Positions 8,864 through 41,415 of a stretch of DNA of 44,683 nt are shown one piece after another. Both the position numbers and the translations under genes were made by a program. Under the pieces are notes generated by a model. It saw only the letters and a list, made by a program, of their open reading frames with translations, made no database searches and was not told where the DNA came from. The first letter of the stretch is position 1. The number at the start of each line of letters is the position of its first letter. Source of the stretch: Octopus bimaculoides (taxonomy: Eukaryota); the NCBI RefSeq assembly GCF_001194135.2, contig NC_068993.1, positions 43,420,195 through 43,464,877 of the forward strand. Reading direction: 5' to 3'.

Positions 8864-9060
8864 TCCAAATCACGCCATGGTCAACATTGCCTTTAATCCT
8901 CCTAGGGTCAATAGAAATAAAGAATCGGACCAATACTGGGGTTCATATATTTATTCGTTCCCTCCCACTAAAATTTCTGGCCATTTGTTTATGCAAAAAA
9001 TCAATTTAATTTAATCTACTGTTACATTTTTAAAGAAGATGGACTGGCACAGTTTCTGAG

Positions 9061-9440
9061 AGACAGACATGGTTGTATGGTTAAGAAGCCTGCTTCCCAA
9101 CCATGTGGTTTCAGGTTCAGTCCCATTATCGTGGCACCTTGGGCAAGTGTCTTCTACTATAACCCCAAGCCAACCAGAGCCTTGTGAGTGGATTTAGGAG
9201 GCAGAAACTGAGAGAAGCTCATTGTGTGTGTGTGTTTCTGTTTCTGTGTCCTAACATCAAGGGACATGAGTAAGTGAGTGTCACCATTGCACAAAGGATG
9301 TCATTCATCCCCAATCTTCCATTAAAATTAGTCCAGTTGTTTGGAAAATTAGCTTGCTTTGAAACAGGTGAGGATTGACAGCAGGAACAGCATCCAGCCA
9401 CCAACTCTCATTGGTTGAGCAAACATACAGCAAGAATACA
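9061..9440 (+). mobile_element. SINE family A
   Basis: Head AGACAGACATGGTTGTATGGTTAAGAAG, GGTTCAGTCCC and CACCTTGGGCAAGTGTCTTCTACTAT. Confidence 0.85.
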
Positions 9441-10639: not shown

Positions 10640-10893
10640 TATAACAGCACTTCCAGAACTCGGTTTTGCTGACAAGGAAGCAGTCTTTGCAAGAACCTCA
10701 TATTGCCAGAGATCTGTCTTATGTTGTCTCCTCCATCAGGCTTAACCACTTCATTCCATGTCTTCCCGGGTCTCCCTCTTCCACAAGTTCTGGTCACATT
10801 TAGCAATTCAGCACTTCTCCATACAGCTGTTTTATCTATATGCATCATGTTTCCATACCAGCACCAACTCCTTTCTTGCGCACAACATTTGAA
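10640..10893 (-). mobile_element. RTE-clade LINE, 3' end of ORF2 (decayed)
   Basis: Translation QERSWCWYGNMMHID...TCGRGRPGKTWNEVVK matches the RTE C-terminal pattern RRLRWYGHVxRM...RGRPRKTW. Confidence 0.85.
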
Positions 10894-10920
10894 CACATGC
10901 ACACACACTGGACTATGCGC

Positions 10921-11071
10921 AGTTTCCATCTGCCAAATTCACTCATTAAGTTATTGGTTAACTTGAAGCAATAGTAAAAGACACTTGCCCAAGGTACTGC
11001 ACAGTGGGACTGAACACAAGACAACATGGATGTGAAATGAACTTCTTAACCACAAAGCTATACCTGCTCCT
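10921..11071 (-). mobile_element. SINE family A head
   Basis: AAGACACTTGCCCAAGGTACTGCACAGTGGGACTGAAC is the reverse complement of the family core. Confidence 0.85.
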
Positions 11072-11639: not shown

Positions 11640-13386
11640 GTTCATGGATGCATATGTTCAGCTTTAACTTTCCAGTATGTTGCAACAAAGGAAATAGAAA
11701 TATATCTCTGTTTCTATAAGAATGATTGGCAGCCAAAGTTTGCTCTCTTAAACTCAACAATTTCGGAAATAATTCCAGTGATAAAAGATCTTTTCAAATA
11801 TTTTTATATTTTATTCATATACCTTTTTATTTTTGGAATCTGCTGCTAACCAAAAATCAGTTCATTAACAGGATAGATACGATTAACATTTATAAATATG
11901 CATTGCAAGAGGGAATGTTATTATCTGCAAGACCTTCACACATAAACTCCTTTACCATTCTTCTTTCCAAACTGTTATTCTTTTACCAGTGACAATCTAA
12001 ATGTGATCAAACTATGTTATTCTGACCATTAAAATAATCTATTCAAAAGTTGTTTTGTTCAGTCTTTAGCCAAAGCTTTTCCATTTTGCAGAGAATATCC
12101 ATTTATAGTAAGTTTCTCTGGGAAAAAGAAGAAATGTCTTTTTATGACTGCCTTCACAAGATGTTCATAAACATTGTCAATTGTAGAAAATTTGATACTT
12201 ATTTTGCAGTTATTTCCTCAAAGTTATATTTGCATAGTGATTCTAGCTATTAAAATAACTTTGTAACTTCATTCAGCCTAATAAAAATATATTTATTATT
12301 TAAGCAAGTATCTTTGTGTTCATATTACCCCGTTCCAGCAACTTAACTCACATTTAGATAACTGCTGGGATGTAAAATTCCCTCTTATCTGTTTCATAGT
12401 TGCAGTGAGCCTGTAATGAGCAGGGAGAGAAAGAAGTTCTTTCCATCATGGACAACATTATAGCTACATATCGTGTTGGTTATTTTCTCAGTGTAGATAA
12501 GGAGCTAATGTATTCTTCAGTGCTAACTAAATCTTCTGGAAAACAACTGCTTGAAAATACATTTCCTTTTATGCTATAGCCATCTTTATAGTATATTCAT
12601 ATCATACATACATTCATTCATTCATTCATATGTATATGTGTATCCATCTATCTATGTGTGTATGTGTATCTGCATACACATATCTATATCATTGTACACT
12701 CTATATATGATTGATTACTCAGAAAAATATACATTAATATGCTTGTCATGTATTTCAGTTTATTATATACAGCTCATTTGTGTATAACTCAGGATAGATA
12801 CCCTATTGTTTAATAATTATCTCCCTTCTTTTTTTTTTACCTCTCTTTAGAATAATTCACTGCCACAAATCCAGCTCTAATCTGTCAATATTTACACATT
12901 TTTTCTTTATCTTTTTTTATGTGTATGTATGTGTGTATGAATGAATGTGTTTTTTGTGGATTGCTGAATAATATTCAGCTATTTTAATGAACTTTTCAAT
13001 ATCAGAATGGAATTTTCTGACTAGAAATGATGTAAGAAATGGGGAAGGTTAAGGGTGGGAAGGGATAAAATTCCATATCATTAAATGGATAGAGTATTAA
13101 AATTTATCTAACCTGAAAATACATGAATTGGGTTCTAAATTTTGTCCACCCCCACCCCTCGTGTTCTGTTCTTTATAAGCAACAGTGTAATTTATTTTCA
13201 TTCCTGGAGGTTTCAACAATAATAAATGATTCAAGCCAAGAACACAAAACAACCTAACATGACATTATTCCTCAAGCGAGAATTTTACTACTATATAAAG
13301 TCTCTATTGGATTTAAAGAAAGAAAAATATCTAAGAAAAAATTTTTTTTTTTTTTTATAGTTTCTTCTTCAATGAAACTTACCTAT

Positions 13387-13538
13387 GGACAGACATGGTT
13401 GTGTAGTTATACAAAGTTTACTTCGTGGCCATGTCATTCTGAGTTCAGTCCCAGCGTGTGTAACTTTGGTAAATGTCTTCTGTTATAGGCCCAGAACAAT
13501 CAAAGCCTTGTGAATGAATATTGTAGACGGAAGCCTGT

Positions 13539-13577
<39 letters not shown>

Positions 13578-13640
13578 TTGTGTGTGTGTGTATGTCTATA
13601 TATATATGTGTGTGTATGTATATATATATATTTATGTATG
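13387..13640 (+). mobile_element. SINE family A head plus internal (TG)/(TA) microsatellite
   Basis: GACAGACATGGTTGTGTAG...GAGTTCAGTCCC...CAAAGCCTTGTGAATG...GACGGAAGCC followed by (TG)n(TA)n. Confidence 0.8.
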
Positions 13641-13714: not shown

Positions 13715-14700
13715 AATTCTATGAGGTTGGCTTTTGGTAAAGGAGGGAGTTCTATATCACAGCCCTCTTTTGAATTTCTTGCCTTGATATTAGTTCATCT
13801 GGGATCCTGGACAGCATGAGGTCAAGTTGTTTTTTGAAAACCTCTACTCCCACTCCATGGAGATCCCTCAGATGTTTTGGCTAGGAGTTAAGTAGCTGTG
13901 AGCCCTAGAATCCCAAGCTATTGCAGAACATGGTCCTCGCCTTAGATGAGACAGCTGGGACTTTTGGAACAGTGCAGTGACGTCCATTTCAAGGTCCGGT
14001 ATAACTCTCAAGTCCAAAGTTTGGTGCCAGCCCCTCCAGTATCTTCCACACATATATCACTGCATACCTCTCCTGTCTTCATTCCAGAGAGTAGAGTCGT
14101 AGCTCTTTCAGTCTCTCCTAGTAGCACAGCTGTTCCATTGATGCAATCTTCCTTGTGTAATATCGCTGAACCACCTCAAGTTCTGCTATTAATCCTACAG
14201 TGTAAGGTGACCACAGTTGAGAGCAGTAGTCCAGGTGGCTGAGGACAAAAGTCCTCCCTAGGACCAGCATAGTTTCCTGGCCCCTTGTACTAAAGGTTCT
14301 CAGAATACATTCAGCCATTCGCCTGCACACTGCCACCATCTTAGTGACATGCATGTGAAATGAGGCATCGTTGCTCATATCAATCCCAAGATCACGCACT
14401 GTGATTCTAGGATTGCCGCTCCTTTCAGTCCAAAGAATTGTTGTTGTGACTTCTGAGCACCAATTAGATGGTAGCAGAGGGCGTGGGATTTGCTTGCATT
14501 AAATTGCATGTTGTTGTCTTCAGCCCATTTATATATGGCATGTAGGTCTTTCTGTAGAAGATTAGCATCAGCAGGTTATTTGACTGCTTGTACTACTTTT
14601 GTATCATCGGCTTGGCTAGTAAGTGTGGCTGTCTGTGTAACTGATGGCATGTCTGAAAGAGCCACCATGAACAGCAGTGACCCCAATACAGTTCCCTGAG
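13715..14700 (-). mobile_element. CR1-type LINE, 5'-truncated (RT motif C through C-terminus), frameshifted
   Basis: Peptides QGTVLGSLLF...TLTSQADDTKV (YADD motif decayed), RDLGIDMSNDASFHMHV, VLSHLDYCSQLWSP..IAELEVVQRYYTRKI and a YVWKILEGLAPN-type C-terminus are CR1-clade signatures. Confidence 0.92.
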
Positions 14701-14722
14701 TATTTGTGTGTGTGTATGTATG

Positions 14723-14755
<33 letters not shown>

Positions 14756-14757
<2 letters not shown>

Positions 14758-15040
14758 TAGTCATCATCATTTAATGTCCATTTTCCATGCTGGCATGGGT
14801 TGGACAGTTTGACTGGGGACTGGCAAGCCAGGAGGCCGCACCAGGCTCCAATCTGATCTGGCAATGTTTCTACAGCTGAATGCCCTTCCTAACACCAACC
14901 ACTCCAAGAGTGTAGTGGGTGCTTTATACATGTCATCAGCATGGGAGCCTGTCAAGCGGCACTGGCATCGGACACGTTCAAATGGTACTTTTTAAGTGCT
15001 GCCAGTACAGGAGCCAGTTGGGGTGGGGGCGCTGACTGGC
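14756..15040 (-). mobile_element. SINE family C (ends CCAACCCATGCCAGCATGGAAAATGGACATTAAATGATGATGAT)
   Basis: The same sequence recurs at ~9915-10090, ~37850-37990 and ~38080-38220, with a (GAT)n tail. Confidence 0.75.
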
Positions 15041-18902: not shown

Positions 18903-19134
18903 NNNNNNNNNNNNNNNNNNNNNNNNNNNNNNNNNNNNNNNNNNNNNNNNNNNNNNNNNNNNNNNNNNNNNNNNNNNNNNNNNNNNNNNNNNNNNNNNNN
19001 NNNNNNNNNNNNNNNNNNNNNNNNNNNNNNNNNNNNNNNNNNNNNNNNNNNNNNNNNNNNNNNNNNNNNNNNNNNNNNNNNNNNNNNNNNNNNNNNNNNN
19101 NNNNNNNNNNNNNNNNNNNNNNNNNNNNNNNNNN
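18903..19134. other. Assembly gap (232 N) flanked by poly-T and (TA)n/(TG)n
   Basis: N run visible in the sequence. Confidence 1.
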
Positions 19135-19170
19135 ATATATATATATATATAAACACCCACATACACACGT

Positions 19171-23453: not shown

Positions 23454-24570
23454 ATATATGTATTTACCATATATGCACGTACACTGAACCGCAAAAAACA
23501 CAAAACGTGTGTGACTGAAATATGTTTTAATTTCATTATGTCAGAGATAAATTTTGATAAATCTGATAAAGTCAATTTCTTGGATGCACTTTGACTACAG
23601 TCTATGGGTCGTTGTCATCTGTTCTAGTAGTGGGTGGATCCAGCACATCGAGATTGTAGGGCATGTCATGTTCAGTACCATGTACGCCCTCCCTGGATGT
23701 TCAAAAAGCCATACACCATCGGTACATGGAGTGCATGAGGTGGTTCACAAGCCGTTGGCACCTGTTCCCACACCCTGAGGAAAGCTGCCTCCAGTTTCAC
23801 CCAAGTTGTCAGCCTTAGGACCACCTGGTTCAGCCATCTTCTGGATTTCATCCCACAGGTATTCAGTTGGGTTCATATCTGGGCTGAGAGCTGACCACAG
23901 CATGGTCCTGCTGTTGTGCTGACGCAGGAAGTCCATGGTGACTCTGGCTGTGTTCTCTCTATGTTGCTAATAATCAGGTCCTACCTGATGCGTCCAAATT
24001 ACAAATGCCAGGAATGCAGTTCAAGTTGATTTTTATACCCATAACCTCCACAAGATGCACATGCATTTTGGTTTCCATGAGAATTGTTTGCGACTGCCAC
24101 CCACAGCATTCAACACAGCTACTAAGTTGAAAGGTTTCCTGCAATTTGGGTCTCAGCCATAAACCAGCATGTCTTGGAATATCTACACTTACATCCCTGA
24201 AATAAATTTTCAGAATTTATCATATAAAAATGACATTTGAAAAAATTGCATTTCTTTTATGGTTCAGTGTGTATGGTAAATGCCATACATATATTTTTCT
24301 GTGTGTACATATATGTGCTTGCATATTTATATGTGTATGGTATATATTTCTGTATGTGTGTGTGTGTGTGTGTGTGTGTAGTAAGCATTTACATTCCACA
24401 CCAAGCTGCTTGACTGTTGATGTCATTTGTTGACATTTCCTGGTCAACAGATCATCAGAGTGAGATAAGAGCTCTCTTAAGCAACAGGAAAGGCTTCAGG
24501 CTGCAAAACATCTCTATAATATATAATCCTCTAACCCATGTATGGTAAAATGGATGTAAAGTGAATTAGT
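23241..24570 (+). mobile_element. SINE family A split by a Tc1 insertion
   Basis: Head at 23241-23400, (TG)n, then the Tc1, then a decayed type-2 tail at ~24350-24570 (TAACCCATGTATGGTAAAATGGATGTAAA). Confidence 0.65.
23482..24269 (-). mobile_element. Tc1/mariner DNA transposon, internally deleted, transposase relic
   Basis: TIRs TA|CACTGAACC..AAAA and TTTT.TGGTTCAGTG. The - strand peptide TARVTMDFLRQHNSRTMLWSALSPDMNPTEYLWDEI matches the Tc1 DD34E C-terminal motif WPxxSPDLNPIExLW. Confidence 0.92.
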
Positions 24571-26101: not shown

Positions 26102-26491
26102 TTTATAAATGCCTCTCAATATAATTTGTTGACGTTATTCACAAAGTGCACCAAAATATAAAAGGAAAAAGTTTGTTTTGGAGACACCTTTGTTAAATAT
26201 GATATAGAGGTAATTGTAATTTTTTATAAAATGCTTTGTTTAATTTTGTGGTGTCTTGAGAGGGTCATTATGCTAATAATAAAATTCACACACACACACT
26301 GGTTCTATTTTACTTCGTTATTATTTATCTGTCAATTGGTAAACTATTAACCAATTTACTGTTTAATTAATCATTCTGTCAGTAATGAAAGAAGTGAAAT
26401 AGAATCAATGCTTGTGTTTATTCTTGGCATAATGACCCTCCTGAGATAACAAAATTATGCTTGAACATATAATTTCACATAAAGAACCTAG

Positions 26492-26626
26492 CAAACCAAA
26501 TCCACAACCAAAATATAACTAAATGACATCTTTTTCTTATTTTATTTTAGGTAAGTTTGATTCAACATTCTTCCTTCTGAATTTACTGTGAATTTACAAC
26601 ATTATTGGCTTGAATAAAAGGTAAGA
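26492..26626 (+). promoter_or_regulatory. Candidate recursive splice site (ratchet point) with 70-nt RS-exon (26551-26620)
   Basis: No AG between 26492 and 26548, TGAC branch-like motif at 26524-26527, then CATCTTTTTCTTATTTTATTTTAG|GTAAGT. A second donor AAG|GTAAGA follows at 26621. The 70 nt contain stops in all three frames. Confidence 0.55.
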
Positions 26627-26782
26627 AGAATTAAATAAAGCTAGTTTTTCAGGAAACCATGTATGATGCAAAACCTTGGGGTTTAATGATGGGTGGCACC
26701 TTACTGGGTGTTAAGTAAATATGGTTGTAAGTAATTGTATTGTGAAGCAACACTTAGGTAAGATACTGTGGTATCAGTCAAC

Positions 26783-27106
26783 TTAAAGACTAGACTGTGG
26801 ATTAAAGATGAGACTGGATTAAGGACAAGACTGAGAATTAAAGACGAAACTATGAGTCAAAGACTAGACTGATGACAAAAGATGAGACTGTAGATTAAAG
26901 ACTAGACTGAATTACAGACTAGACTGTGGATTAAAGACTAGACTGATGATGAAAGATGAGACTGTAGATTAAAGACTAGACTGAATTACAGACGAGACTG
27001 TAGATTAAAGACTTGACTATGGATTAAAGACTAGACTGGATTAAAGATTTGACTGTGGATTAAAGACTAGACTGGATTAAAGACTAGACTGGATTAAAGA
27101 CTAGAC
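26783..27106. repeat. Minisatellite, 17-20 bp unit (G/TG)GATTAAAGACTAGACT
   Basis: About 17 units visible, including a ~75-bp higher-order duplication. Confidence 0.95.
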
Positions 27107-27698: not shown

Positions 27699-27946
27699 AT
27701 GATTACTAGTTCCTGTTGCATTTCTATCAATTTGTCTTGAGAGACTATGATTACATAAAGTTTTAATTGGGAGGATGTTTTTTATTGTTGGTCTTTTTAA
27801 ATTGTGTTACTTAAATTCTTTTTCTGTTTTATTACAAATATATCAGTAAAAAAAACAGGCTTTTGTCTGTGACAAATTTAGTTTGTGGAATAAAAATGTA
27901 GTTGAAGGAATTTCTAGGTATCAGAAAAGTTTCAAATAGCCTTTAT

Positions 27947-28338
27947 AGGTGCAGGCATGGCTGTGTGGTTGAGAAGTCTGCTTACTAACCATATAATTTT
28001 AGATTCAGTCCCACCATACCACAAATTGGGCAAATGTCTTCTACTACAGCCCTGGGCCAACTAAAATCTTGTGATTGGATTTGGTAGACAGAAATGTATG
28101 TGTGTGTGTGTGTACCCTTGTCTTGGCATCACATAATGGTTACAAATGAGCATCATCATATGAGTGATATTGTTCATTTCCAGTCTTCCATGGGAAACAT
28201 TTCTGGCTATGAGACATGTTAACTTGCTTGGAAATAGGTGGGGGTTGGTGACTGGAAGAGCATCAGGCTGAAGAAAATTTTCCTCAGCAAATTCCATCCA
28301 ACCCATGCAAGTGGACATTAAATGTTGATGATGATGAT
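27947..28338 (+). mobile_element. SINE family A with tail type 2
   Basis: Head AGGTGCAGGCATGGCTGTGTGG, ending CCAACCCATGCAAGTGGACATTAAATGTTGATGATGATGAT. Confidence 0.88.
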
Positions 28339-31165: not shown

Positions 31166-32218
31166 TTATATCAACAGATAGATACATGTGTGTGTTTACA
31201 TGAATGAGTTCATGCTTCTCTCATCTACACATGATTGTTGACAATGGCTTTGCTAATTGTGTCATTTTCTTGCAGCCTTTGTAAACAAAAGGCTTGTTCA
31301 TACAGTGTTGTTTTGTTGTTCAGTAAATAGATTGTGAGATTATTACTTTGCTTGGAGACTGATGGAGATTGACATCATGAAAGATAGCTCTTTCATGATG
31401 TCAAAAGAAAACTCCACCTCATCCTAGTTCATCCAAGCATGGAAAAGCAAACATTAAGGCAATGATGTAGACTTGAAATCTTTATTCTTTTCTTATTTCA
31501 TGTTATATTGAGCTCTTTAGGTATCACATCATTGCCACATATATTAATAGAATAATTTATAAGGTGGTAAAACTGGCAATCATCAGAGTGTTGAACAGAA
31601 TGCTCTGCAGCATTTGAGAGAAGCCTGCATCAGCACAATGACTGGTACAGCCCCCACTCTCCCTCCTGCTCTCACATTTTGGATTTTCTGTTGGATCATG
31701 GATAAGAGTAGGTGCTGAGATGATATCTATGTCAGCTTGCAAGTATACAGACACCTAAAATAATTAACAAAAGCATGGAACATTCTCTGAGGTCACACTT
31801 GCCTGTGAGTGTTGGCTATGGTCAATATGCCAAAAGGAGAATGTAACTTGTGAAAACATACACTAATTTGAATAACATTTGTTAAAATATTCATTCATTT
31901 ATTGCTGGTAACATATCTAATTATTTCAATCAACAAGACTACTTCCGTCACTTCAAATAGCAGAGGGGTTGGAGTAGCATAAAGAAACAATAGCAACATG
32001 ATTATAAGAGGATGCTTGTACATATTGATCTTTGGCTCACTGTGGTTATAGTGGAAGATTGTTCATGCTCACAATCACTGACAATATGTACTTTCTGTGA
32101 AACAACAGACAAGCTTCTGTGTTGTCACTTGACTTGCTAAAAGTAGCGGCTATATTTCTCACATCACACACACCCAAATGTCTTAAATAAGAAATTGACT
32201 CGTATGATATATAAGTCA

Positions 32219-32376
32219 GGCATAGGAGTGGCTGTGTGGTAAGTAGCTTGCTTACCAACCACATGATTCCGGGTTACCAACCACATGGCACCTTGGGCAA
32301 GTGTCTTCTACTATAGCCTTGGGCCGACCAAAGCCTTGTGAGTGGATTTGGTTGACGGAAACTGAAAAAAGCCCAT

Positions 32377-32424
<48 letters not shown>

Positions 32425-32632
32425 TGTGTGCCTGTGTTTGTCCCCCCAACATCGCTTGACAACCGATGCTGGTGTGTATATGTCCCCGTAACTTAGCAGT
32501 TCAGCAAAAGAGACTGATAGAATAAGTACTAGGCTAACAAAGAATAAGTCCTGGGGTCGATTTGTTTAACTAAAGGCGATGCTCCAGCATGGCCACAGTC
32601 AAATGACTGAAACAAGTAAAAGAGTAAAAGAG
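32219..32632 (+). mobile_element. SINE family A, best-preserved copy (tail type 1)
   Basis: Retains many CpGs, has an internal (TA)n and an (AGTAAAAG) tail. The B-box is replaced by a 14-bp local duplication. Confidence 0.92.
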
Positions 32633-33478
32633 AATATATCCTACATACTTCTAAATGTTAATGGAGTAGTCATAGTGAGAATATCTTTGCTCATAGGCCT
32701 GTGCAATCAAGGTTGAACTGGTGCTAAAAATCAAAAATTACATACACTTGATCAATATTTACAGTTACCAACTTAAGAGGGTGGATTGGCAGAACAGTAA
32801 GAACATTGGACCAGATAACTTATTGTATTTGTTTAGACTCTTTGCATTCTGTGTTCAAATCCCATCTTGGTTCACCTCAGTGGTAGACATAACATAACCT
32901 ATTGGTCAGTTTAACACTATTTGGCATCTTAAGTGCCTGTAACAGAATCCACTTTGATACAAGCATTCAGACCATGATTCTAGTTTGAGGATACCTTCCT
33001 TCCCTCCCTCCGTTTACCAAAGCAGACATTGGTACATGACAAGTCGTCCAACTCGTGATATCCTGTCAAATTGTCCAACCCATGCCAGCATGGAAGACAC
33101 ACATTTGATGGTGGTGATGATGATGCTATTGTTGTCATCTCTACCAATAACATACACTTGTGACATTTTCATTCTCTATTAGTGACTTCCATTCTCTGAA
33201 GTCTCTAAAATATGTTTCCAGCCCTTAGGAAAAGCCTGATGTGTTGTACTATCAGAGTGATCCTGAAGCTCTTTCTTCATAGTCTATGTATCGGTTTCAT
33301 CAATATAAAGTAACTTCAATTTATCCACATATGGGCTTCTTTTAGCCACATTATTCTTAGCTGAACTCGAATTTGCCAGTATCAAAAATATCTTCTGTTG
33401 GTGTGAAAATTCGAAGAAACTATCCCATTAATCCTTCATGTTTTCAATCATCAGATCATATTTGCATCAGGTACTTAC

Positions 33479-35090: not shown

Positions 35091-35959
35091 TTCTAATTCA
35101 TCGTACCTGTAACTCAAAGAGCCAACTTTGTTTTATATTGCATTTCACTAATTCAATTTAAGAATTATATCATGGTATCTGTGGAATCCTCAGCCATTTC
35201 CACGTTAATTTAATGAGTAGTTCCATTGATCAAACAACTGAAAGCTCATCATCATAACCAACCGACAGAGCTTCTGTCTCAGAGACAGTAACAGAAGGAG
35301 TTATACACTTAAATTTCTATCTTACAAATAAAGTGTAATTTAAATAATATTATCCTTTAAGAGTATTTCACTGGTGGGGTTTTTTTTTCCTGAAAATGAC
35401 CTAATTCTCTATTTCACTTTAATATTTGGACTGCATGATTCTTTATGTGAATCCATGTTAAAATAGATTTTCTTGTATCTCATTATGCCAATAATAAGCA
35501 TACACTCACCAGTTCTATTTCTTTATTATTCATTAATTAGTTAATTATTTAACCTATTAACAAATAATAAAGAAACAAACGAGAACCAGTATGTGTGTTT
35601 ATGATAAGCATGATGACCCTTCCAAGATACAATAAAATCTTATTTGTATAATTTTTGAGTTATTTTGTTTTGTTCTTAATATTTCAAAAATACCAACCTT
35701 TACTCTAAACCATACACTTTACAGATTTTAAGTTTTGAAGCATGAATAAAAAGTAATTTAAATTTCATTTCATTTTGTCCATTCCATTCCATTCCATTCC
35801 ATTCCTCCAACAAATTAGACTAGATTGTTAATTAAAGTTTTGTTGTTCTCTCACCAGGTGCTATATTGCTGTTGTAAGGTCACAGCTAAGACTTGATCAC
35901 TTTGATTGTCAAATTAATATAATGCTTTGCTTGTCAATGTTTGTTCATTTCCACTCAGA

Positions 35960-40027: not shown

Positions 40028-40714
40028 TATTATTTTATAATATAGAAATTGGTTTGTGTTTTGTTTAAAAGAATTTTCACCTGCTTGCAATGTTTACTTC
40101 ATAAATGTTAACTATCTCTTACACATGGATATTGTTGAAAGTTTATTGAGTACCATGTTTCAGAAGTTAAAAAAATTAATAATTTCATTTTATTTTTTAA
40201 TAGCTTCTAGCTGCAGATTACATTGATTTCAAGAGAGATCGGTTGTCTATTACTGCACTTTGTTGGTGATAGACCATTATAACAATTAACAATATGCACA
40301 TTATACACTTTGGTTTATACCATATGAGATGTGTGTGTGTGATCTTGACATCCTGTGATCATTGTGAACAAGTATTTCCCTAATTGAAGTGGGGAGTAGT
40401 GTCCTTCATATCTAGCTATGGGAAAATATTATCTTATTTGACAACAGTTAAGAGTTGGCTATAAGAAGGGTATCCTGCCATAGAAAATCTGCTTCAACAA
40501 ATTCCATTTGACTCCTATAAACATGGAAAAAGTGAATGTTAAAAGTGCTATTATGATGATGATGATGATGATAAGTATGAGTGTGTGTATACATATCACA
40601 TGACCAACCAGACTATCAAATGTTATACAGCGCTGGTCACAATGTGCTTTGCATCATTTTAGCCATTGAATGATGCCACCCCACTGGCTAGGCAAGCAGG
40701 CCAATTGATAGATT

Positions 40715-40962
40715 CTTTTATTCTTTTACTTTTTTCAGTCATTTGACTGTGGCACCACCTTTAGTCGAGCAAATTGACCCCAGAACTTATTCTTTGTAAG
40801 CCTAGTACTTTTGCCGAACTGCTAAGTTATGGGGACATAAATGCACCAGCATCGGTTGCCAAGCAATGGTGGCAGGGACAAACATATACACACACATACA
40901 TATATATATATAAATAAATGACGGGCTTCTTTCAGTTTCCATTTACCAGATCCACTCACAGA
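40715..40962 (-). mobile_element. SINE family A, head-truncated, tail type 1
   Basis: Close reverse-complement match to 32340-32620. Confidence 0.88.
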
Positions 40963-40983
40963 TAGATAGATAGATATCTTATA

Positions 40984-41415
40984 GGGACAGGTTTGGCTTT
41001 GTGCAGTTTGCTTCCCAACACATGGTTCTAAATTCAGTCCCACTGTGTTATACTTTGGGCATGTCTTCTGTTTTAACCCTGAGCTGACCAAAGCCTCATG
41101 AGGCAGAAACTAAGAAAAGCCCATTGTGTATGAATATATACATGTGTGTGTGTGTCTGTATGTTTGCATCTCCTTGTCTTTATGCCACATGATAGTTGTA
41201 AAATGATTGTCACTATCATACAAGCAGTGTCATCCATTTCCAATATTCTGCAAGAATGTCTGGTCAGAGGAAATATTATCTTGCTTGGAAACAGTTGAGG
41301 ATTGGTGACAGGAAGAGCAAAGGCTATGGAAAATCTACCTCAATAAACTCCATCCTATTCATGTAAGCATGAAAAAGTGGGCATTGATGATGATTTTGAT
41401 TATGATGATGATGAT
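40984..41415 (+). mobile_element. SINE family A with tail type 2
   Basis: Head, AAATTCAGTCCCACTG, body, and a (GAT)n tail. Confidence 0.85.

What the first reader, a model, noticed from the sequence alone, without database searches (positions are those of the whole stretch)
26492..26626. Candidate recursive splice site with a poison RS-exon in a probable cephalopod long intron
Seen in the sequence: a 57-nt AG-free zone, a branch-like TGAC, an uninterrupted pyrimidine tract, TAG immediately followed by a perfect GTAAGT, and a second strong donor (AAG|GTAAGA) exactly 70 nt later. The 70 nt have stops in all three frames and lie in sequence with no recognisable repeat. Established: this is the architecture of recursive splice sites (ratchet points plus RS-exons) in long Drosophila and vertebrate introns, where the reconstituted donor is used and the frameshifting exon is normally skipped. 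Inference: recursive splicing may operate here on the + strand. I know of no characterisation of it in molluscs, but that needs a literature check.
Basis: partly seen in the sequence, partly recalled or inferred. Interest (0 to 1): 0.75.

Follow-up and report, generated by a model that had tools for sequence, protein, structure and literature searches.

The report
Unproven recursive-splice-like motif, octopus-type DNA
The sequence pattern is really there and looks exactly like a recursive splice site with a short poison exon, but nothing I could test shows that it sits in a transcribed intron, so it is still an untested candidate that could equally be a chance motif beside a transposon.

Summary
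There is a 57-nt AG-free zone (26492-26548), a branch-like TGAC (26524-26527), TAG|GTAAGT (26548-26556), AAG|GTAAGA exactly 70 nt later (26618-26626), and stops in all three frames between them. One correction: the pyrimidine tract is 17 of 19 pyrimidines, broken by A at 26539 and 26544.

This is the best recursive-site-like motif on either strand. Its core is expected only about 0.003-0.02 times per 44.7-kb window. That still means hundreds of chance copies in a genome of about 2.5 Gb, which is an assumed size.

The interpretation cannot be decided with these tools. The window has no detectable coding exon. It is dense in repeats: SINE copies, LINE and DDE remnants, microsatellites. No cephalopod genome or RNA data were reachable, so strand, intron status and conservation are untested.

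A foldback repeat (26241-26503, possibly to 26536) runs into the acceptor half, and a minisatellite starts 130-160 nt downstream. The core and the 70 nt are single-copy in the window.

My estimates:
- fortuitous, unselected motif: about 0.5
- true recursive site: about 0.3
- ordinary or cryptic exon: about 0.1

No paper in the searched library describes recursive splicing in molluscs.

The parts
26492..26548 (+). AG-free zone of 57 nt upstream of the acceptor-like AG. Its 5' end (to 26503, possibly to 26536) lies in the tail of a repeat copy.
   Evidence: for the zone; for the repeat overlap
26524..26527 (+). Branch-point-like TGAC. Its A at 26526 is 24 nt upstream of the acceptor G, inside the -36 to -21 range reported for fly recursive branch points.
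   Evidence: for the sequence; (Duff et al. preprint) for the range
26530..26548 (+). Pyrimidine-rich tract, 17 of 19 pyrimidines, interrupted by A at 26539 and 26544
   Evidence: 18 of 20 pyrimidines before the AG, the highest of 253 AGGT sites
26548..26556 (+). TAG|GTAAGT: acceptor-like AG directly followed by a consensus donor. This is the candidate ratchet point, with the splice junction between 26550 and 26551.
   Evidence: chance estimates
26551..26620 (+). Candidate 70-nt RS-exon. Its length is not a multiple of 3 and it has stops in all three frames. It is single-copy in the window and shows no significant RNA structure.
   Evidence: fold z-score +0.31
26618..26626 (+). AAG|GTAAGA: second strong donor, 70 nt after the first. 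It ranks among the four best donor-like sites on the + strand.
26613..26639 (+). Poly(A)-signal-like hexamers around donor 2: AATAAA at 26613-26618, ATTAAA at 26630-26635 and AATAAA at 26634-26639. A G/T-rich stretch follows at about 26660-26720. They matter only for a minor rival reading.
   Evidence: AATAAA background of 61 per strand per window
26241..26503 (.). Foldback (MITE-like) repeat copy directly upstream. The hairpin spans 26241-26457. Homology to the second copy, at 35392/35424-35638 on the - strand, is clear to 26503 and weak to 26536.
   Evidence: MFE -79.3 kcal/mol, z -9.9
26752..27106 (.). Minisatellite with a 19-nt unit and 36/74-nt higher order, firmly from 26783. 26752-26771 carries a third AGGTAAG and may be a degenerate first unit.

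Best explanation
Most likely this is a fortuitous, unselected pairing of splice-site-like motifs in AT-rich, repeat-dense non-coding DNA of an octopus-type genome.

How it could arise (inference): a T-rich tract lies next to, and perhaps partly inside, the tail of an old foldback transposon copy. It happens to end in TAG and abut GTAAGT. A second donor-like 9-mer lies 70 nt on.

On this reading the site is either not crossed by a + strand pre-mRNA at all, or is used only as splicing noise.

Shown: the motif, its rarity per window, the neighbouring repeats, and the absence of detectable coding exons.

Inferred: the absence of selection and of use.

The margin over the recursive-splicing reading is small.
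For: - AGGTAAGT occurs at exactly the frequency that composition predicts: 1.66 expected and 2 seen.
- The full core is expected 0.003-0.02 times per window. That scales to hundreds of chance copies in an assumed genome of about 2.5 Gb.
- The window shows no coding exon. Ten long ORFs are absent from the protein collection. A 70-ORF chimeric query against 5.8 billion proteins found nothing at E <= 0.001.
- About 19% of the window is repeated within itself. It carries SINE copies, a LINE reverse-transcriptase remnant, a weak DDE remnant and about 50 tandem-repeat rows. This looks like gene-poor or deep non-coding sequence, where intergenic is at least as likely as + strand intron.
- The acceptor half overlaps a foldback repeat. 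Fly ratchet points, in contrast, are described as ultraconserved unique sequence (PMC8605326).
- The third AGGTAAG, at 26756, may be only a degenerate first unit of the minisatellite, a weak 14-of-20 match. If so it needs no functional reading.
Against: - This is the single best recursive-site-like motif among 253 AGGT sites on both strands.
- It is followed at 70 nt by one of the four strongest donor-like sites on the + strand, p about 0.01.
- The full architecture is expected only about 1-2 x 10^-4 times per window.
- It matches the published anatomy of ratchet points with cryptic RS-exons point by point.
- The AG|GTAAGT core is not shared with the other repeat copy.
- T exceeds A by 4.1% in 8 of 9 5-kb bins, and the LINE remnants lie on the - strand. 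Both are what + strand transcription would give under the vertebrate pattern, which I state from my own knowledge.
Confidence: 0.5

Rival explanations
1. A true recursive splice site (ratchet point) with a cryptic 70-nt RS-exon in a long + strand intron.

Proposed steps:
1. The 70 nt are recognised by exon definition through the acceptor at 26550 and the donor at 26621.
2. The upstream exon is spliced to 26551, which regenerates a donor (exon end|GTAAGT).
3. That regenerated donor outcompetes GTAAGA at 26621, so the frame-breaking exon is removed together with the rest of the intron.
4. If the exon is included instead, its stop codons would trigger nonsense-mediated decay.
For: Every sequence-level feature is met.
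- Juxtaposed acceptor and donor, with 18 of 20 upstream pyrimidines and a 57-nt AG-free zone.
- A branch-like A at -24, inside the reported -36 to -21 range.
- A short out-of-frame cryptic exon with a strong downstream donor. Fly RS-exons are about 50 nt, poorly conserved and out of frame.
- The architecture is rare under all the null models tried.
- An exon-free stretch of at least 44.7 kb would suit the long introns in which such sites occur: 11-133 kb in flies.
- The positive T-over-A skew on the + strand.
Against: - There is no evidence that any transcript crosses the site.
- There is no annotation, RNA or conservation data.
- The G/C skew points the other way.
- The acceptor half abuts or overlaps a transposon copy.
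- Vertebrate genomes of similar size have very few fully suppressed intronic ratchet points: nine were noted definitively. If octopus is vertebrate-like, the prior is low.
- The two donors score about equally in their genomic context, 6.34 against 6.39, so dominance of the ratchet-point donor is not shown.
Confidence: 0.3
2. An ordinary or cryptic cassette exon (26551-26620) that is actually included in some transcript. It could be an untranslated, lncRNA or repeat-associated exonised exon, or a regulated poison exon. It would use the 26550 acceptor and the 26621 donor conventionally.
For: - A strong acceptor-like site and a strong donor lie 70 nt apart, a normal internal-exon size.
- Pyrimidine-rich tails of repeats are a known source of new acceptors (my own knowledge), and one lies directly upstream.
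- Mammals have many expressed RS-exons, potentially more than 6,400.
Against: - An exon that begins with a perfect GTAAGT would tend to be re-spliced out.
- There is no coding potential, with stops in all three frames.
- The wider 70-ORF query, which did not include this stretch because stops in all frames leave it no ORF long enough, found no protein match anywhere in the window.
- No transcript data are available.
Confidence: 0.1
3. A cryptic intronic polyadenylation site kept silent by U1 snRNP binding (telescripting-like). The two donor-like sites bracket the AATAAA/ATTAAA hexamers and block cleavage at about 26655-26665. Alternatively, the module is a short alternative terminal exon.
For: - Three poly(A)-signal-like hexamers lie within 27 nt around donor 2, and a G/T-rich stretch lies downstream.
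- Two top-ranked U1-complementary sites lie within 100 nt of them.
Against: - AATAAA occurs about once per 730 nt on this strand (61 in the window), so the hexamers are unremarkable in A/T-rich DNA.
- The arrangement was noticed after the fact.
- The reading also needs + strand transcription, which is not shown.
Confidence: 0.04

Closest known systems
Drosophila intronic ratchet points with cryptic RS-exons (Ubx, kuz, Bx, luna; Burnette 2005, Duff 2015, Joseph 2018/2021, Pai 2018)
   Same: - Tandem acceptor|donor, (Y)n-YAG|GTAAGT.
- A short cryptic exon (about 50 nt in flies, 70 nt here) ending in a second donor.
- Exon content that is out of frame and carries stops.
- A branch-like A in the -36 to -21 range.
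- A surrounding exon-free stretch longer than 40 kb.

   Different: - Fly sites are defined by junction reads, saw-tooth coverage, lariats and ultraconservation. None of these could be tested here.
- Fly sites are unique conserved sequence. This one abuts a foldback repeat and a minisatellite.
- The host gene and strand are unknown.
Vertebrate RS-sites and RS-exons in long neuronal genes (Sibley 2015; Blazquez 2018)
   Same: - YAG|GT junction.
- RS-exon defined by a downstream donor.
- Competition between the regenerated donor and the RS-exon donor.
- Inclusion introduces premature stop codons, the 'poison' outcome.

   Different: - Vertebrate sites were found from RNA data in genes longer than 150 kb (my own knowledge). 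Only nine fully suppressed intronic ones were noted definitively.
- Here there is only a motif.
Pseudoexons: fortuitous acceptor-donor pairs in long introns, for example in DMD
   Same: Good splice-site-like motifs at exon-like spacing in deep non-coding sequence, normally unused or used at noise level. PMC7175933 is listed; I did not read it in detail.
   Different: Typical pseudoexons do not start with a consensus donor. That feature is what makes this one look recursive.

Membership tests
Recursive splice site (ratchet point) with RS-exon | [quoted passage not shown] | tested here: met
   TAG|GTAAGT at 26548-26556. 18 of 20 upstream bases are pyrimidines. The AG-free zone is 57 nt. The A of TGAC lies at -24.
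Recursive splice site (ratchet point) with RS-exon | A downstream donor that defines a short cryptic exon, usually out of frame or carrying stops | tested here: met
   AAG|GTAAGA lies 70 nt downstream. 70 mod 3 = 1. There are stops in all three frames.
Recursive splice site (ratchet point) with RS-exon | The regenerated ratchet-point donor is at least as strong as the RS-exon donor | tested here: inconclusive
   PWM scores are 6.34 (TAG|GTAAGT) and 6.39 (AAG|GTAAGA) in genomic context. The real -3 to -1 bases would come from an unknown upstream exon. The PWM was taken from memory.
Recursive splice site (ratchet point) with RS-exon | Lies inside a long intron of a gene transcribed on the same strand | not testable with these tools
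   No coding exon was found in the window. No cephalopod annotation was reachable. The strand skews conflict.
Recursive splice site (ratchet point) with RS-exon | RNA evidence: exon-to-site junction reads, saw-tooth read density, lariats | not testable with these tools
Recursive splice site (ratchet point) with RS-exon | Evolutionary conservation of the acceptor|donor core above its flanks | not testable with these tools
   Exact-match scans for the site in genome contigs and viral contigs found nothing. The metagenome scan for the repeat motif gave only chance matches. None of these collections is expected to hold cephalopod genomes.
Recursive splice site (ratchet point) with RS-exon | Unique sequence, not a copy of a dispersed repeat | tested here: inconclusive
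   26537-26751 has no second copy in the window. 26243-26503, and weakly to 26536, aligns to a second foldback copy that lacks the AG|GT core. Genome-wide copy number is unknown.
MITE-like foldback element (upstream neighbour only) | Long inverted-repeat hairpin, and more than one dispersed copy | tested here: met
   Arms are 26246-26283/26417-26454 and 26290-26319/26388-26417. MFE is -79.3 kcal/mol with z -9.9. A second copy at about 70% identity lies at 35424-35638 on the - strand. Target-site duplications were not determined.

The most novel reading that the evidence does not exclude
This is a working recursive splice site with a suppressed 70-nt poison RS-exon in a long intron of an octopod gene. 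As far as the searched library shows, that would be the first such site described in a mollusc, and the first outside insects and vertebrates. It could also have been assembled next to, or partly from, a foldback transposon.
Probability: 0.3. Interest if true: 0.55.

Novelty: new member of a known kind. Interest (0 to 1): 0.3.

Why it matters
Recursive splicing has been characterised in flies and vertebrates and is thought to help process very long introns accurately. Cephalopods have large genomes, and from my own knowledge many long neural genes.

Showing ratchet points with RS-exons there would extend the mechanism to a third major animal lineage. It would also offer a sequence rule for finding more of them.

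If the site is real, a single site adds one data point, not a new principle. If it is a chance motif, it illustrates that even a perfect (Y)n-TAG|GTAAGT plus downstream donor is expected many times in a genome of this size. Motif-only calls need transcript or conservation support.

The novelty label 'new member of a known kind' applies only if the site is real. My single most likely reading is a chance motif.

Tried and rejected
- **Looking for the host gene.** Ten long ORFs are not in the protein collection. A chimeric query of 70 non-repeat ORFs (3,910 aa) gave no hit. Pfam on ten ORFs gave only a sub-threshold DDE_3 match. No exon was found, so gene and strand remain unknown.
- **Looking for other copies or orthologues.**
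  - A metagenome scan with the foldback motif gave 43 loci, none similar to the window beyond the pattern.
  - Exact scans for the site in genome contigs and viral contigs gave nothing.
  - Contigs carrying related LINE copies (Logan SRR11869391/SRR11869384, ENA ERZ23578778) match only the LINE, at 67-79% DNA identity.
- **Third protein search.** I ran no further search on ORFs next to the site. One search showed that non-coding ORFs of this genome are not in the collection.
- **A structured RNA at the site.** Rejected. The fold z-score is +0.31, and there are no Rfam hits at gathering or relaxed thresholds.
- **A ~70-nt tandem periodicity to explain three AGGTAAG within 210 nt.** Rejected. 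The segments are not similar. The third copy may belong to the edge of the minisatellite.
- **A U1 snRNA pseudogene on the - strand (ACTTACCT).** Rejected on reading the sequence. The flanks do not continue the U1 sequence, and Rfam finds nothing.
- **Strand inference from SINE orientation.** 13 copies on + and 8 on -, which is uninformative.
- **Literature search for the SINE core sequence.** No hit.

Full report
**1. The observation**

Reading 26300-26800 and checking by script confirms the coordinates.
- The last AG before the site is at 26490-26491. 26492-26548 is therefore AG-free for 57 nt.
- TGAC is at 26524-26527. Its A lies 24 nt before the acceptor G at 26550.
- TAG at 26548-26550 is directly followed by GTAAGT at 26551-26556.
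- AAG|GTAAGA is at 26618-26626.
- The interval 26551-26620 is exactly 70 nt and has stops in all three frames.

One detail is not right. The pyrimidine tract (26530-26548, CTTTTTCTTATTTTATTTT) is 17 of 19 pyrimidines, with A at 26539 and 26544. It is strong but not uninterrupted.

**2. Is it more than chance?**

The 8-mer AGGTAAGT is seen once per strand. First-order composition predicts 1.66 for both strands together, so the 8-mer alone is nothing.

The combination is rare.
- Of 253 AGGT sites on both strands, this one has the most pyrimidine-rich upstream 20 nt (18 of 20).
- It is the only site with at least 15 of 20 pyrimidines and a GTRAG donor.

Three null models were used for the core (at least 17 of 20 pyrimidines plus AG|GTAAGT).

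| Null model | Expected per window |
|---|---|
| Markov simulations, order 1 and 3 | 0 in 800 |
| Shuffling within 30-150-nt blocks, keeping local composition | about 0.003 (0.04 for at least 15 of 20) |
| Real fraction of pyrimidine-rich 20-mers times Markov probability of the 8-mer | about 0.02 |

A rough donor weight matrix, with frequencies from my own memory, ranks AAG|GTAAGA and TAG|GTAAGT fourth and fifth of 2,637 GT sites on the + strand. A donor that good within 120 nt downstream has a probability of about 0.01.

The full architecture is thus expected about 1-2 x 10^-4 times per window. Scaled to an assumed genome of about 2.5 Gb (about 56,000 windows), chance still gives roughly 170-1,100 core matches and about ten full architectures.

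The 57-nt AG-free gap is not unusual in itself: 5% of gaps on this strand are that long.

A third AGGTAAG at 26756 may be a degenerate first unit of the adjacent minisatellite. I do not count it.

**3. Surroundings**

The site sits between two repeats.

*Upstream.* 26241-26457 is a foldback element. Its arms pair at 79-80%. It folds at -79.3 kcal/mol, against -39.4 for shuffles, z = -9.9.
- A second copy at about 70% identity lies at 35424-35638 on the - strand.
- Local alignment of the two copies runs from 26243 to 26536. It is convincing to 26503 and weak from there to 26536.
- The repeat therefore certainly covers the first 12 nt of the AG-free zone. It may reach the TGAC and the start of the pyrimidine tract.
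- The other copy continues with TTTTCAGGAAAAAAAAACCCC. The AG|GTAAGT core is therefore not a feature of the family, as far as two copies can show.

*Downstream.* A minisatellite with a 19-nt unit and 36/74-nt higher order occupies 26783-27106.

*Between them.* 26537-26751 has no other copy in the window, no significant RNA structure (z = +0.31) and no Rfam match.

**4. The window as a whole**

The window is 34% G+C, carries about 50 tandem-repeat rows and has a 242-N assembly gap.

About 19% of it is repeated within itself. This is mainly a SINE family with at least 21 fragments, 13 on + and 8 on -.

There is a decayed LINE reverse-transcriptase remnant at about 13755-14770 on the - strand.
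- Its best named relative is an Octopus 'jockey-like' protein, XP_014783059.1, at 57% identity.
- The best DNA matches are anonymous contigs at 67-79% identity.

There is also a weak DDE transposase remnant at 23748-23966 on the - strand.

From my own memory, the SINE resembles the abundant octopus SINE. 'Cephalopod' is plausible but only weakly shown.

I found no coding exon.
- Ten long ORFs are absent from the protein collection.
- A chimeric query of 70 non-repeat ORFs found nothing among 5.8 billion proteins.

The window is therefore either part of an intron longer than 44.7 kb or intergenic.

Strand hints conflict.
- After masking simple repeats, T exceeds A by 4.1% in 8 of 9 bins. Under the vertebrate pattern (my own knowledge) that fits + strand transcription.
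- C exceeds G by 2.9%, which points the other way.
- The LINE remnants and the long T runs lie antisense to +. This is weakly consistent with a + strand gene, but there are too few of them to count.

**5. Comparison with what is known**

Fly ratchet points are tandem acceptor|donor pairs in introns of 11-133 kb. They are detected by junction reads, saw-tooth density and lariats, and their branch points lie at -36 to -21.

They need a short cryptic RS-exon of about 50 nt with its own donor.
- Its content is poorly conserved and out of frame.
- The acceptor|donor core is ultraconserved.
- The ratchet-point donor is generally the stronger of the two.

Recursive sites show about twice the conservation of control AGGT motifs.

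In vertebrates about 400 YAG|GT junctions were studied, and RS-exon inclusion introduces premature stops. Only nine fully suppressed intronic sites were noted definitively.

The candidate meets every feature that is purely sequence. None of the defining functional features could be tested: host intron and strand, RNA evidence, conservation.

**6. Weighing**

Conditional on the features seen, the question is how many real sites of this quality an octopus genome holds, against the chance number.
- If octopus resembles flies, where recursive sites occur in a large share of very long introns (as I recall from Pai et al. 2018, not checked in the excerpts), real sites would match or outnumber chance ones.
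- If it resembles vertebrates, chance dominates.

I added a low prior that an exon-free 45-kb stretch is a + strand intron, and a small penalty for the transposon overlap.

My estimates:
- fortuitous, unselected motif: about 0.5
- true recursive site: about 0.3
- conventional or cryptic exon: about 0.1
- silenced poly(A) site or other: under 0.1

These are judgements, not computed posteriors.

**7. Novelty**

The library holds no paper that links recursive splicing with octopus. With molluscs or cephalopods there are only incidental co-mentions, and the one I checked (cephalopod) was in the reference list only.

If real, the site would be a new member of a known kind in a new phylum. That would interest splicing specialists, but it is expected given that the mechanism is regarded as unified across metazoans.

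As it stands it is a good motif-level candidate without functional support. The interest score of 0.3 reflects that.

Noticed in passing
window 26241-26457 (and 35424-35638, - strand): A long foldback element with a stem of about 105 bp. MFE is -79.3 kcal/mol, z = -9.9. A second diverged copy lies 9 kb away. It looks like a MITE. If transcribed it would form long double-stranded RNA, a possible substrate for small-RNA or editing pathways.
   Followed up: partly
window 26783-27106 (possibly from 26752): A minisatellite of about 17 copies of a 19-nt unit (TTAAAGACTAGACTGTGGA), with 36- and 74-nt higher-order periods. Its possible first, degenerate unit carries a third AGGTAAG.
   Followed up: partly
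window, for example 32217-32633, 9053-9392, 27930-28335, 40714-41415: A SINE family with at least 21 fragments (13 on +, 8 on -). It often has an internal (TA)n/(TG)n stretch and its own GGTAAGT donor-like motif (for example at 32239). From memory it resembles the abundant octopus SINE.
   Followed up: partly
window 13755-14770 (-) and 10640-10940 (-): Frameshifted LINE reverse-transcriptase remnants. The best named match is an Octopus jockey-like protein at 57% identity. Related copies on anonymous Logan and ENA contigs match at 67-79% DNA identity.
   Followed up: partly
window 23748-23966 (-): A short ORF with a Tc1/mariner-like DDE motif (…SPDMNPTEYLWDE…). The Pfam DDE_3 match has E = 0.034, below the curated cut-off.
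   Followed up: partly
window 18903-19144: An assembly gap of 242 N. It is flanked by a 51-nt T run and by TG/AC microsatellites, so the record is a scaffolded draft at this point.
   Followed up: no
whole window: A consistent + strand excess of T over A (4.1%, in 8 of 9 5-kb bins after masking simple repeats), together with an excess of C over G (2.9%). The + strand is pyrimidine-rich throughout. The cause is unknown: transcription, repeat content or replication.
   Followed up: partly
window 26613-26639: AATAAA, ATTAAA and AATAAA hexamers bracket the second donor-like site, with a G/T-rich stretch 20-80 nt downstream. This is probably just A/T-rich background (AATAAA occurs about once per 730 nt).
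   Followed up: partly
window 13376-13384 (- strand): The only other TAGGTAAGT in the window lies on the - strand, at the left edge of the SINE fragment at 13388-13634. Fewer than 15 of the 20 bases upstream of it are pyrimidines.
   Followed up: no
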